Shown: piece after piece, positions 17,066-17,560 of the stretch | How positions within the stretch are numbered: the stretch's first letter is position 1 | How the letters are laid out: each line of letters opens with the position of its first letter | Assembly: GCA_965235115.1 (NCBI GenBank) | Contig: OZ249437.1 | Location: 10,602,001-10,666,000, forward strand | Origin: Laetmonice hystrix | Taxonomy: Eukaryota | Direction: 5' to 3' | Length of the DNA stretch: 64,000 nt | Notes under the pieces: model-generated | Seen by the model: only the letters and a program-made list of their open reading frames with translations | Database searches by the model: none | What the model was told of the DNA's origin: nothing | Made by a program: the position numbers and the translations under genes

Positions 17066-17078
17066 CACGAGACATTTT
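17066..17078 (-). promoter_or_regulatory. Putative selector D, 32-44 nt upstream of the exon 5b acceptor
   Basis: RNA AAAAUGUCUCGUG is complementary to element C. Confidence 0.5.
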
Positions 17079-17231
17079 GTTGGCTAGTGCTGCGTTGGTT
17101 GCGACTGCTCCATGCTGTCCCGGGGGTGTTCTGAGGCAGGGCGCCTGCATCGTGGAGGAGGAGGAGGAACGCAGGAGGGGGGAGGGGCAGGGACATGTTG
17201 TTGGCATTCTGTTCAGGAGCAACAGAGGCAT

Positions 17232-17259
17232 TCCAGGTGCTGCACTCAGGGGGTAAGGT
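17232..17259 (-). promoter_or_regulatory. Putative splicing selector A (intron between 5a and 5b), complementary to 16352-16374
   Basis: RNA ACCUUACCCCCUGAGUGCAGCACCUGGA can form 22 bp with the RNA of 16374-16352 (3 bp, one mismatch, 9 bp, 4-nt bulge, 6 bp, 1-nt bulge, 4 bp). Confidence 0.6.
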
Positions 17260-17284
17260 AATTTTTTTAGGGTCTTTCACTCAC

Positions 17285-17403
17285 CTTCCACTAAAGAGGT
17301 TAACAATGTGACGGTGGCTGCTTTGCGACGGCCTGCCGGCAAACTTAAACCGATTTTGTCTAATTTATCTCTCAATGAACGACCGCCATTTTTGGATTTG
17401 GCC
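17285..17403 (-). CDS. TFAP2: AP-2 exon 5a (119 nt; canonical-type copy, putative mutually exclusive exon)
   Basis: Acceptor ctcttcttacctttcag|G GCC AAA and donor GTG GAA G|gtgagt. Encodes (R)[39 protein letters not shown](G), close to vertebrate [41 protein letters not shown]. Absent from the ORF track in this frame. Confidence 0.93.
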
Positions 17404-17504
17404 CTGAAAGGTAAGAAGAGATCCAGCACATATTATGACGGGTGGGTACAAGACAAGGGCAATAAATGTTACAGGTGTACGTCAAAACGTCAAGTGCACA
17501 ATGA

Positions 17505-17529
17505 CGTCACGTCACGTCACGTCACGTCA
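17505..17529. repeat. (ACGTC)5 pentamer repeat upstream of the exon 5a acceptor
   Basis: atgacgtcacgtcacgtcacgtcacgtcaa, with two further acgtcaa copies just before it. Confidence 0.85.
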
Positions 17530-17547
17530 AAGACATACAAGTAAGCT

Positions 17548-17560
17548 AAAATGTCCCGTG
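17548..17560 (-). promoter_or_regulatory. Putative upstream docking element C (intron 4)
   Basis: RNA CACGGGACAUUUU forms 13 contiguous pairs (one G-U) with AAAAUGUCUCGUG at 17078-17066. Pairing would loop out exon 5a. Confidence 0.5.

What the first reader, a model, noticed from the sequence alone, without database searches (positions are those of the whole stretch)
17066..17560. Upstream RNA pairing C:D that would loop out exon 5a, completing a crossing bidirectional switch
Seen: CACGGGACAUUUU (145-157 nt upstream of the 5a acceptor) forms 13 contiguous pairs, one of them G-U, with AAAAUGUCUCGUG (32-44 nt upstream of the 5b acceptor). The transcript order is C, exon 5a, A, D, exon 5b, B, so C:D and A:B cross and may compete. 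Established: this bidirectional topology has been described for insect exon clusters (srp, RIC-3, MRP1, Dscam1 exons 4 and 9). Inference: an independently evolved RNA-structure switch choosing between AP-2 DNA-binding variants. D lies in the expected branch-point zone of 5b, so pairing could alternatively repress 5b.
Basis: partly seen in the sequence, partly recalled or inferred. Interest (0 to 1): 0.75.

Follow-up and report, generated by a model that had tools for sequence, protein, structure and literature searches.

The report
Possible RNA helix looping out AP-2 exon 5a
A 13-base-pair match between two intron stretches flanking one of two twin exons of this worm's only AP-2 gene is real and rarer than chance, but with no RNA data or close relatives its proposed role in choosing between the twin exons is plausible and unproven.

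Summary
On the minus strand, C (17560-17548) and D (17078-17066) form 13 contiguous pairs with one G-U. They lie 145-157 nt upstream of exon 5a and 32-44 nt upstream of exon 5b. A helix this long in this geometry occurs in about 0.3-1.3% of shuffles and 0.7% of placements elsewhere in the window.

The "crossing switch" reading is only partly supported. Crossing is not competition. It shares six nucleotides with D and, with an extended A:B (-37 kcal/mol), loops out exon 5b. At equilibrium C:D (-16 kcal/mol) is predicted not to form. In a nascent transcript that ends before B2 it forms with probability 0.93. If functional, it is a transient co-transcriptional arm.

The exon pair is ancient. Four distant relatives carry it with inter-exon introns of only 59-65 nt, against 250 nt here, so these helices are lineage-specific. 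The 8-nt core of C:D recurs around the pair in two relatives, at other positions.

No RNA run or intron-alignable relative was available. My estimate that C:D is functional is about 45%. The closest analogues are Drosophila srp and human ATE1.

The parts
17548..17560 (-). C: upstream arm, 145-157 nt upstream of the exon 5a acceptor
17565..17570 (-). Optional 6-nt extension of the C arm (GUAUGC). It pairs with 17066-17061 across a 4-nt bulge.
17285..17403 (-). Exon 5a, 119 nt, the canonical AP-2 variant. Its peptide is identical to exon 5a of relative L004.
17228..17262 (-). A, extended.
17188..17205 (-). Second copy of the docking-like element (GCCAACAACAUGUCCCUG). It has its own 14-bp partner about 7 kb upstream.
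   Evidence: (D12)
17073..17099 (-). A2: 5' arm of the strong downstream helix. It overlaps D at 17078-17073.
   Evidence: (I1)
17066..17078 (-). D: arm in the inter-exon intron, 32-44 nt upstream of the exon 5b acceptor and just 5' of the likely branch-point A residues
16916..17034 (-). Exon 5b, 119 nt, the diverged variant (30/39 residues shared with 5a; dN/dS about 0.1)
16533..16553 (-). E: weaker downstream complement of the D region (17 of 21 positions pair)
   Evidence: (I3)
16419..16445 (-). B2: 3' arm of the strong helix with A2. It has 23 contiguous pairs including 2 G-U, plus 3 more pairs; -42.3 kcal/mol.
16348..16380 (-). B, extended.
   Evidence: (I16)
28307..28450 (-). 3' part of exon 4. 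The donor lies after 28307, so the upstream intron is 28306-17404, about 10.9 kb.
7942..8083 (-). Exon 6. The downstream intron is 16915-8084, about 8.8 kb.

Best explanation
C:D is a lineage-specific intronic RNA helix and the weak, early arm of a structure-based choice between AP-2 exons 5a and 5b. As the pre-mRNA is made, C pairs with D as soon as D emerges. This encloses exon 5a in a roughly 470-nt loop and brings the exon 4 donor side close to the 5b acceptor. About 620 nt later B2, and then B, are transcribed. A2:B2 and the extended A:B are far more stable. A2:B2 takes six of D's thirteen nucleotides, so it displaces C:D and loops out exon 5b, which favours 5a. The 5a/5b ratio would then depend on whether 5b is committed to splicing within that time window. 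Shown: the sequences, their geometry, their rarity by chance, the predicted energies and the predicted order of folding. Inferred: that the helices form in vivo, the direction of their effect on splicing, and that 5a and 5b are used alternatively. Each is 119 nt, so including both or neither shifts the frame.
For: The 13-bp helix is exact and position-specific. It is rare in shuffles and in real sequence of the same window. D abuts and overlaps the arm of a helix that is itself far beyond chance: 23 contiguous pairs, against a maximum of 14 in the nulls. Chance alone would produce that adjacency roughly 5-20% of the time. All three non-Watson-Crick positions in C:D and A2:B2 are G-U on the transcribed strand, so they would be A-C on the other strand. 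Folding the nascent transcript gives C:D a probability of 0.93, and it appears in both the MFE and the centroid structure. The region is single copy and the docking sequence is not a repeat family. No variant was seen between 15918 and 17584 in the one DNA sample, while the flanks vary. The 8-nt core pair GACAUUUU/AAAAUGUC also flanks exon 5b in relative L004. No shuffle out of 300 shared any complementary 8-mer pair with the window within 600-nt flanks. The pair also flanks the whole cluster in L006. None of 27 single-exon loci has both 8-mers. The same topology is experimentally validated in srp and ATE1.
Against: There is no transcript evidence at all. No relative is close enough to align introns, so no covariation test was possible. 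Four relatives that keep the exon pair have 59-65-nt inter-exon introns and no comparable helices. The core motif is absent from L009 and L010, and it is not conserved between the two closest relatives, L006 and L009. At equilibrium C:D is predicted not to form and is 35 kcal/mol worse than the competing fold. The 571-nt C-to-D region is no more stable than shuffles (z = +0.77). A comparable 14-bp helix exists 7 kb upstream, as chance predicts for the whole intron. The low-variation stretch rests on one sample and on clustered SNPs (p about 0.05).
Confidence: 0.42

Rival explanations
1. Chance complementarity. C and D are unselected intron sequence. The choice between 5a and 5b, if any, is set by A2:B2 and A:B, by splice-site strength, by proteins and by frame plus nonsense-mediated decay.
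For: Another helix of equal quality lies 7 kb upstream. C:D is thermodynamically negligible beside the downstream helices. It has no counterpart in L009 or L010, and no relative has a docking site in its 59-65-nt intron. The recurrence of the 8-mer was noticed post hoc.
Against: D overlaps the arm of a certainly non-random helix. The mismatch is G-U on the sense strand. The core pair recurs in L004 at p below about 0.01.
Confidence: 0.35
2. C:D is functional but acts as a repressor of exon 5b. With its 6-bp extension it covers 17078-17061. That includes the U2 anchoring region and the only A residues at -25 to -30 of the 5b acceptor. Both C:D and A2:B2 would then silence 5b, and 5b would be used only where a helicase or RNA-binding protein opens them.
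For: The position of D and of the extension relative to the acceptor. In ATE1 the competing helices act partly by occluding 3' splice-site regions. 5a is the canonical, more conserved variant.
Against: The branch point is not mapped. A CUAAU motif also exists at -11 to -7. In srp the upstream pairing activates the distal exon by bringing splice sites together.
Confidence: 0.13
3. The flanking inverted repeats promote back-splicing. C:D would circularise exon 5a and A:B with A2:B2 would circularise exon 5b, or they cause plain exon skipping, rather than mutually exclusive choice.
For: From general knowledge, not tested here: short intronic complements flanking an exon are the known drivers of exon circularisation. 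The geometry fits.
Against: Single 119-nt exons are small for circles. Both exons are under purifying selection as coding sequence. There are no RNA data.
Confidence: 0.05
4. C and D are the terminal inverted repeats of a DNA transposon or another DNA-level inverted duplication.
For: The two arms are inverted 13-mers 469 nt apart.
Against: The interval contains a conserved coding exon older than the species. The region is single copy. The extended motif has 15 genomic near-matches against 7 for the reversed control. There is no target-site duplication and no flanking homology.
Confidence: 0.02

Closest known systems
Drosophila srp (serpent) exons 4.1/4.2: bidirectional RNA pairing (Yue et al. 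2016, PMC4691838)
   Same: Two tandem alternative exons. One pairing joins the upstream intron to the inter-exon intron and loops out the first exon. A second joins the inter-exon intron to the downstream intron and loops out the second exon. The authors note that the two may form a long-range pseudoknot.
   Different: In srp the pairings are conserved and were validated by disruptive and compensatory mutations, and outcome follows relative pairing strength. Here nothing is validated, the arms differ about fivefold in energy (C:D versus the downstream helices together), and the gene and phylum are different.
Human/vertebrate ATE1 exons 7a/7b: elements R1-R5 (Kalinina et al., PMC7797038)
   Same: A two-exon mutually exclusive cluster. 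R1 (upstream) pairs with R3 (inter-exon). R2 (inter-exon) pairs with R5 (downstream). The two pairings cross as a pseudoknot. Elements lie on the 3' splice-site regions.
   Different: In ATE1, R1 and R4 compete for the whole of R3 and are conserved across vertebrates. Here C and B2 share only six nucleotides of the docking region, and no conservation can be shown.
Docking-site/selector systems (Dscam1 exon 6, 14-3-3 xi) and the duplication model of Ivanov and Pervouchine (PMC6071210)
   Same: One intronic region (17099-17062) is complementary to several other elements: C, B2, E and a fourth at 16639-16618. The pattern of GACAUUUU and AAAAUGUC copies in the window, L004 and L006 could be read as remnants of a duplicated exon-flanking stem.
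   Different: There are only two exons. The selectors bind adjacent parts of the docking region, not the same part. No intronic paralogy survives around the exons (D1 covers the exons only).
Steric-hindrance mutually exclusive exons (alpha-tropomyosin exons 2/3; from general knowledge)
   Same: Four relatives have inter-exon introns of 59-65 nt, with candidate branch sites 23-32 nt from the 5a donor in two of them. That is the classical way of preventing the two exons from being joined.
   Different: The window's intron is 250 nt, so this mechanism cannot apply here. That may be why helices are found only here.

Membership tests
Bidirectional RNA-pairing control of mutually exclusive exons (srp type) | Tandem homologous alternative exons of equal length whose joint inclusion or joint skipping breaks the frame | tested here: met
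   5a and 5b are both 119 nt, 74% identical in nucleotides, with canonical splice sites and dN/dS about 0.1
Bidirectional RNA-pairing control of mutually exclusive exons (srp type) | Transcripts carry exactly one of the exons | not testable with these tools
   No RNA run holds the locus. Annotated oyster isoforms differ only at the N-terminus.
Bidirectional RNA-pairing control of mutually exclusive exons (srp type) | Pairing between the upstream intron and the inter-exon intron that encloses the first exon | tested here: met
   C:D has 13 bp at -16.2 kcal/mol and p about 0.005-0.01. This is met in sequence only.
Bidirectional RNA-pairing control of mutually exclusive exons (srp type) | Pairing between the inter-exon intron and the downstream intron that encloses the second exon | tested here: met
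   A2:B2 has 23+3 bp at -42.3 kcal/mol and the extended A:B is -36.8 kcal/mol. Pair probabilities are 0.89 and 0.78.
Bidirectional RNA-pairing control of mutually exclusive exons (srp type) | Pairings conserved or covarying in related species | tested here: inconclusive
   No intron-alignable relative was found. Distant relatives lack room for D. The 8-nt core pair recurs in L004 and L006 at other positions but not in L009 or L010.
Bidirectional RNA-pairing control of mutually exclusive exons (srp type) | Disruptive mutations shift exon choice and compensatory mutations restore it | not testable with these tools
   This requires a bench experiment.
Competing docking-site/selector structures (Dscam exon 6, ATE1 R1/R4 against R3) | Alternative partners compete for the same docking nucleotides, so only one helix forms at a time | tested here: inconclusive
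   C:D and A2:B2 share only 17078-17073. With A2:B2 formed, C:D keeps 7 bp (-8.1 kcal/mol). With C:D formed, A2:B2 keeps 21 bp (-39.0 kcal/mol). The competition is one-sided.
Steric-hindrance mutually exclusive exons | Inter-exon intron too short for the donor and branch point to be used together | tested here: not met
   The window's intron is 250 nt. Relatives L004, L006, L009 and L010 have 64, 61, 59 and 65 nt.

The most novel reading that the evidence does not exclude
An ancestral stem GACAUUUU/AAAAUGUC flanked AP-2 exon 5 and was duplicated with it. Different lineages kept different subsets of the four arms: the window keeps upstream, inter-exon and downstream arms; L004 keeps two upstream-type arms and one downstream arm; L006 keeps the outer two. 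In most lineages a roughly 60-nt inter-exon intron enforces exclusivity sterically. In this worm the intron grew to 250 nt and that block was lost. It was replaced by a one-way co-transcriptional RNA timer: C:D forms first and favours 5b, and is then strand-displaced by the much stronger A2:B2 and A:B, which favour 5a. This would be a documented case of one mutual-exclusion mechanism being replaced by another, acting on the DNA-binding/dimerisation region of a master developmental transcription factor.
Probability: 0.15. Interest if true: 0.75.

Novelty: new member of a known kind. Interest (0 to 1): 0.45.

Why it matters
Structure-guided choice between twin exons has been proven in a handful of insect genes and a few vertebrate genes. 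A case in a spiralian worm, in the only AP-2 gene, would change 9 of 39 residues in the conserved C-terminal AP-2 domain (Pfam TF_AP-2). That would extend the mechanism to a new phylum and a new class of target. Distant relatives keep the same exon pair with a roughly 60-nt intron, so the locus also offers a natural comparison between steric and structural ways of enforcing exclusivity. The unequal, partly overlapping helices make a simple, testable prediction: a kinetic switch rather than an equilibrium one. If C:D is only chance, the strong downstream helices still stand as the feature worth testing.

Tried and rejected
1. RNA evidence: the one run search found three DNA runs from a single sample and no RNA, so splicing could not be observed.
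2. Close relatives: three protein searches, using the exon 5b ORF, the exon 5a ORF and the exon 6 ORF, found no species with conserved intron flanks. The exon 7 search found the best full-length relative in oysters, at 68% identity. Three promising long contigs (P0402, P0409, P0121) returned no DNA.
3. L007 and L008 have a single exon 5.
4. A whole-segment duplex-energy test was uninformative, because long inputs give sprawling 'duplexes' no better than shuffles. I used helix length instead.
5. Transposon or inverted-duplication origin is rejected.
6. No known RNA family fits. There is only a sub-threshold mir-214-like palindrome at 18022-18118, which does not fold as one hairpin.
7. A 16-nt upstream-to-downstream complement in L006 is not kept at the orthologous site in L009, so it is not evidence for structure there.
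8. The roughly 650-nt conserved intron block of L006, L009 and L010 has no match in the window.
9. The first related-loci run failed because the query was too short.
10. No branch-point prediction beyond motif inspection was possible.

Full report
**What is there.** The window carries the 3' part of an AP-2 (TFAP2) gene on the minus strand.
- Exon 4 ends at 28307.
- Exon 5a is 17403-17285 and exon 5b is 17034-16916.
- Exon 6 is 8083-7942 and the last exon ends at 3785.
- A whole-genome search with the exon 5a peptide finds only these two copies, so this is the organism's only AP-2 gene.
- The 1.4-kb region is single copy.
- The best full-length relatives are oyster AP-2-epsilon-like proteins. 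It is most likely a spiralian.

**The observation.** C (17560-17548) and D (17078-17066) are exactly as described.
- They form 13 contiguous pairs, one of them G-U, at -16.2 kcal/mol.
- C lies 145-157 nt upstream of the 5a acceptor and D lies 32-44 nt upstream of the 5b acceptor.
- A helix of this length with at most one G-U, between the proximal upstream intron and the 250-nt inter-exon intron, arises in 0.3-1.3% of dinucleotide shuffles.
- The same geometry slid along both strands of the window gives 9 of 1253 placements.
- Over the whole 10.9-kb upstream intron such helices are expected, and a second 14-bp one is indeed present 7 kb upstream.

The region just 5' of D forms a far stronger helix with the downstream intron.
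- A2 (17099-17073) pairs with B2 (16445-16419): 23 contiguous pairs including two G-U, then three more, at -42.3 kcal/mol.
- It is an isolated element with no flanking homology and is not a repeat family.
- A:B and A2:B2 are nested and together enclose exon 5b. In a fold of 17700-16300 their pair probabilities are 0.78 and 0.89.
- All three wobble positions in C:D and A2:B2 are G-U on the transcribed strand.

**Relation of C:D to these helices.** C:D crosses both, which is a pseudoknot and not in itself a conflict. The srp and ATE1 papers say the same of their pairs.
- The real conflict is that D and A2 share 17078-17073.
- With A2:B2 formed, C:D keeps 7 bp (-8.1 kcal/mol).
- With C:D formed, A2:B2 keeps 21 bp (-39.0 kcal/mol).
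- In the full region C:D has probability 0, and enforcing it costs 35 kcal/mol.
- In a transcript ending at the 5b acceptor, C:D forms with probability 0.93 and is the closing helix in both the MFE and the centroid.
- The only coherent role is therefore kinetic: an early helix that encloses 5a and is later displaced.
- D, with an optional 6-bp extension to 17061, also lies on the likely 5b branch-point region. The sign of any effect on 5b is therefore open.

**Relatives.**
- Four distant relatives carry the same pair of 119-nt exons: L004 from an NCBI assembly, L006 from ENA, and L009 and L010 from metagenome projects.
- Synonymous sites are saturated between all of them, and dN/dS is about 0.1, so both exons are old and coding.
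- Their inter-exon introns are 64, 61, 59 and 65 nt, against 250 nt here. They have no room for a docking site and no comparable helices. Steric exclusion is the likely mechanism there.
- L007, L008 and 25 other loci have a single exon 5.
- The helices in the window are therefore lineage-specific and tied to an expanded intron.

**A partial conservation signal.**
- The 8-nt core of C:D, GACAUUUU with AAAAUGUC, also occurs in L004, 8 nt after the 5a donor and 31 nt after the 5b donor, where it flanks 5b. It also occurs in L006, 12 nt before the 5a acceptor and 3.3 kb after 5b.
- I ran an unbiased count of complementary 8-mer pairs shared with the window within 600-nt flanks. L004 shares exactly this pair, and no shuffle out of 300 shares any.
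- None of 27 single-exon loci has both 8-mers.
- Against this, L009 and L010 lack the motif. It is not conserved between the closest pair, L006 and L009. The positions also differ between species.
- I treat this as suggestive only.

**Other evidence.** DNA contigs of the one available sample show no variant from 15918 to 17584, a stretch that contains B through C, while the flanks vary at about 1%. With clustered SNPs and one sample this is worth about p = 0.05.

**Verdict.**
Its strong arm is A2:B2 plus A:B, and C:D is the weak, unproven arm.
- The closest known systems are srp exon 4 and ATE1 exon 7.
- I put about 42% on C:D promoting the 5a/5b choice as described, 13% on it acting as a 5b repressor, 35% on chance, and the rest on minor rivals.

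Noticed in passing
window 17099-17073 and 16445-16419 (minus strand): A 26-27-nt intronic helix (23 contiguous pairs, 2 G-U, -42.3 kcal/mol) flanks exon 5b.
   Followed up: yes
GCAGCAC occurs twice in the inter-exon intron and GUGCUG(C/U) three times within 550 nt downstream of 5b, which allows alternative registers.
   Followed up: partly
L004 2344-2407, L006 5134-5194, L009 3140-3198, L010 1847-1911: Four distant relatives keep the 119+119-nt exon pair with inter-exon introns of only 59-65 nt. This suggests steric exclusion there and an intron expansion in the window's lineage.
   Followed up: partly
window 17470-17575 (minus strand); L006 5320-5400: An (ACGTC)5 microsatellite (17504-17529) and several TTGACGT motifs lie between C and exon 5a. 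One of them (about 17494-17483) forms a 12-bp helix with UCAAAAUGUCAA about 785 nt downstream of 5b. ACGTCA-type motifs also follow exon 5b in L006 and L009. Their meaning is unknown.
   Followed up: no
window 17205-17188 and about 24400-24387: The docking-like element GCCAACAA(A/C)AUGUC is duplicated within the inter-exon intron. The second copy has its own 14-bp partner (one G-U) 7 kb upstream.
   Followed up: no
L006 3945-4640, L009 1806-2487, L010 514-900: A roughly 650-nt intronic block 400-1070 nt upstream of exon 5a is 82% identical between L006 and L009 and partly kept in L010, while the proximal intron is not alignable. It has no match in the window. It could be an enhancer or an RNA element.
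   Followed up: partly
window 15918-17584: No SNP was seen in the DNA contigs of the one available sample across the stretch holding B, B2, 5b, D, A2, A, 5a and C. There is only a 2-nt deletion at 16718 in one run. The flanks show about 1% variable sites.
   Followed up: partly
window 18022-18118: A palindromic stretch gives a sub-threshold mir-214-like match on both strands (24.8 bits against a gathering score of 66.7). On the minus strand it folds into three small hairpins, not one.
   Followed up: partly
window about 19825-19842 and 15682-15705; 17190-17150: On the transcript strand, G-runs lie in both flanking introns (2.4 kb upstream of 5a and 1.2 kb downstream of 5b). They are complementary to the C/U-rich tract in the middle of the inter-exon intron. 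This is low-complexity sequence, and read depth suggests a repeat at 15604-15754.
   Followed up: no
window 17690-17683 and about 16854-16847; L010: A second complementary 8-mer pair (AUAUACUG with CAGUAUAU), 292 nt upstream of 5a and 62 nt downstream of 5b, is shared with L010 (317 nt upstream and 346 nt downstream). It is AT-rich, p about 0.007, and was not pursued.
   Followed up: no
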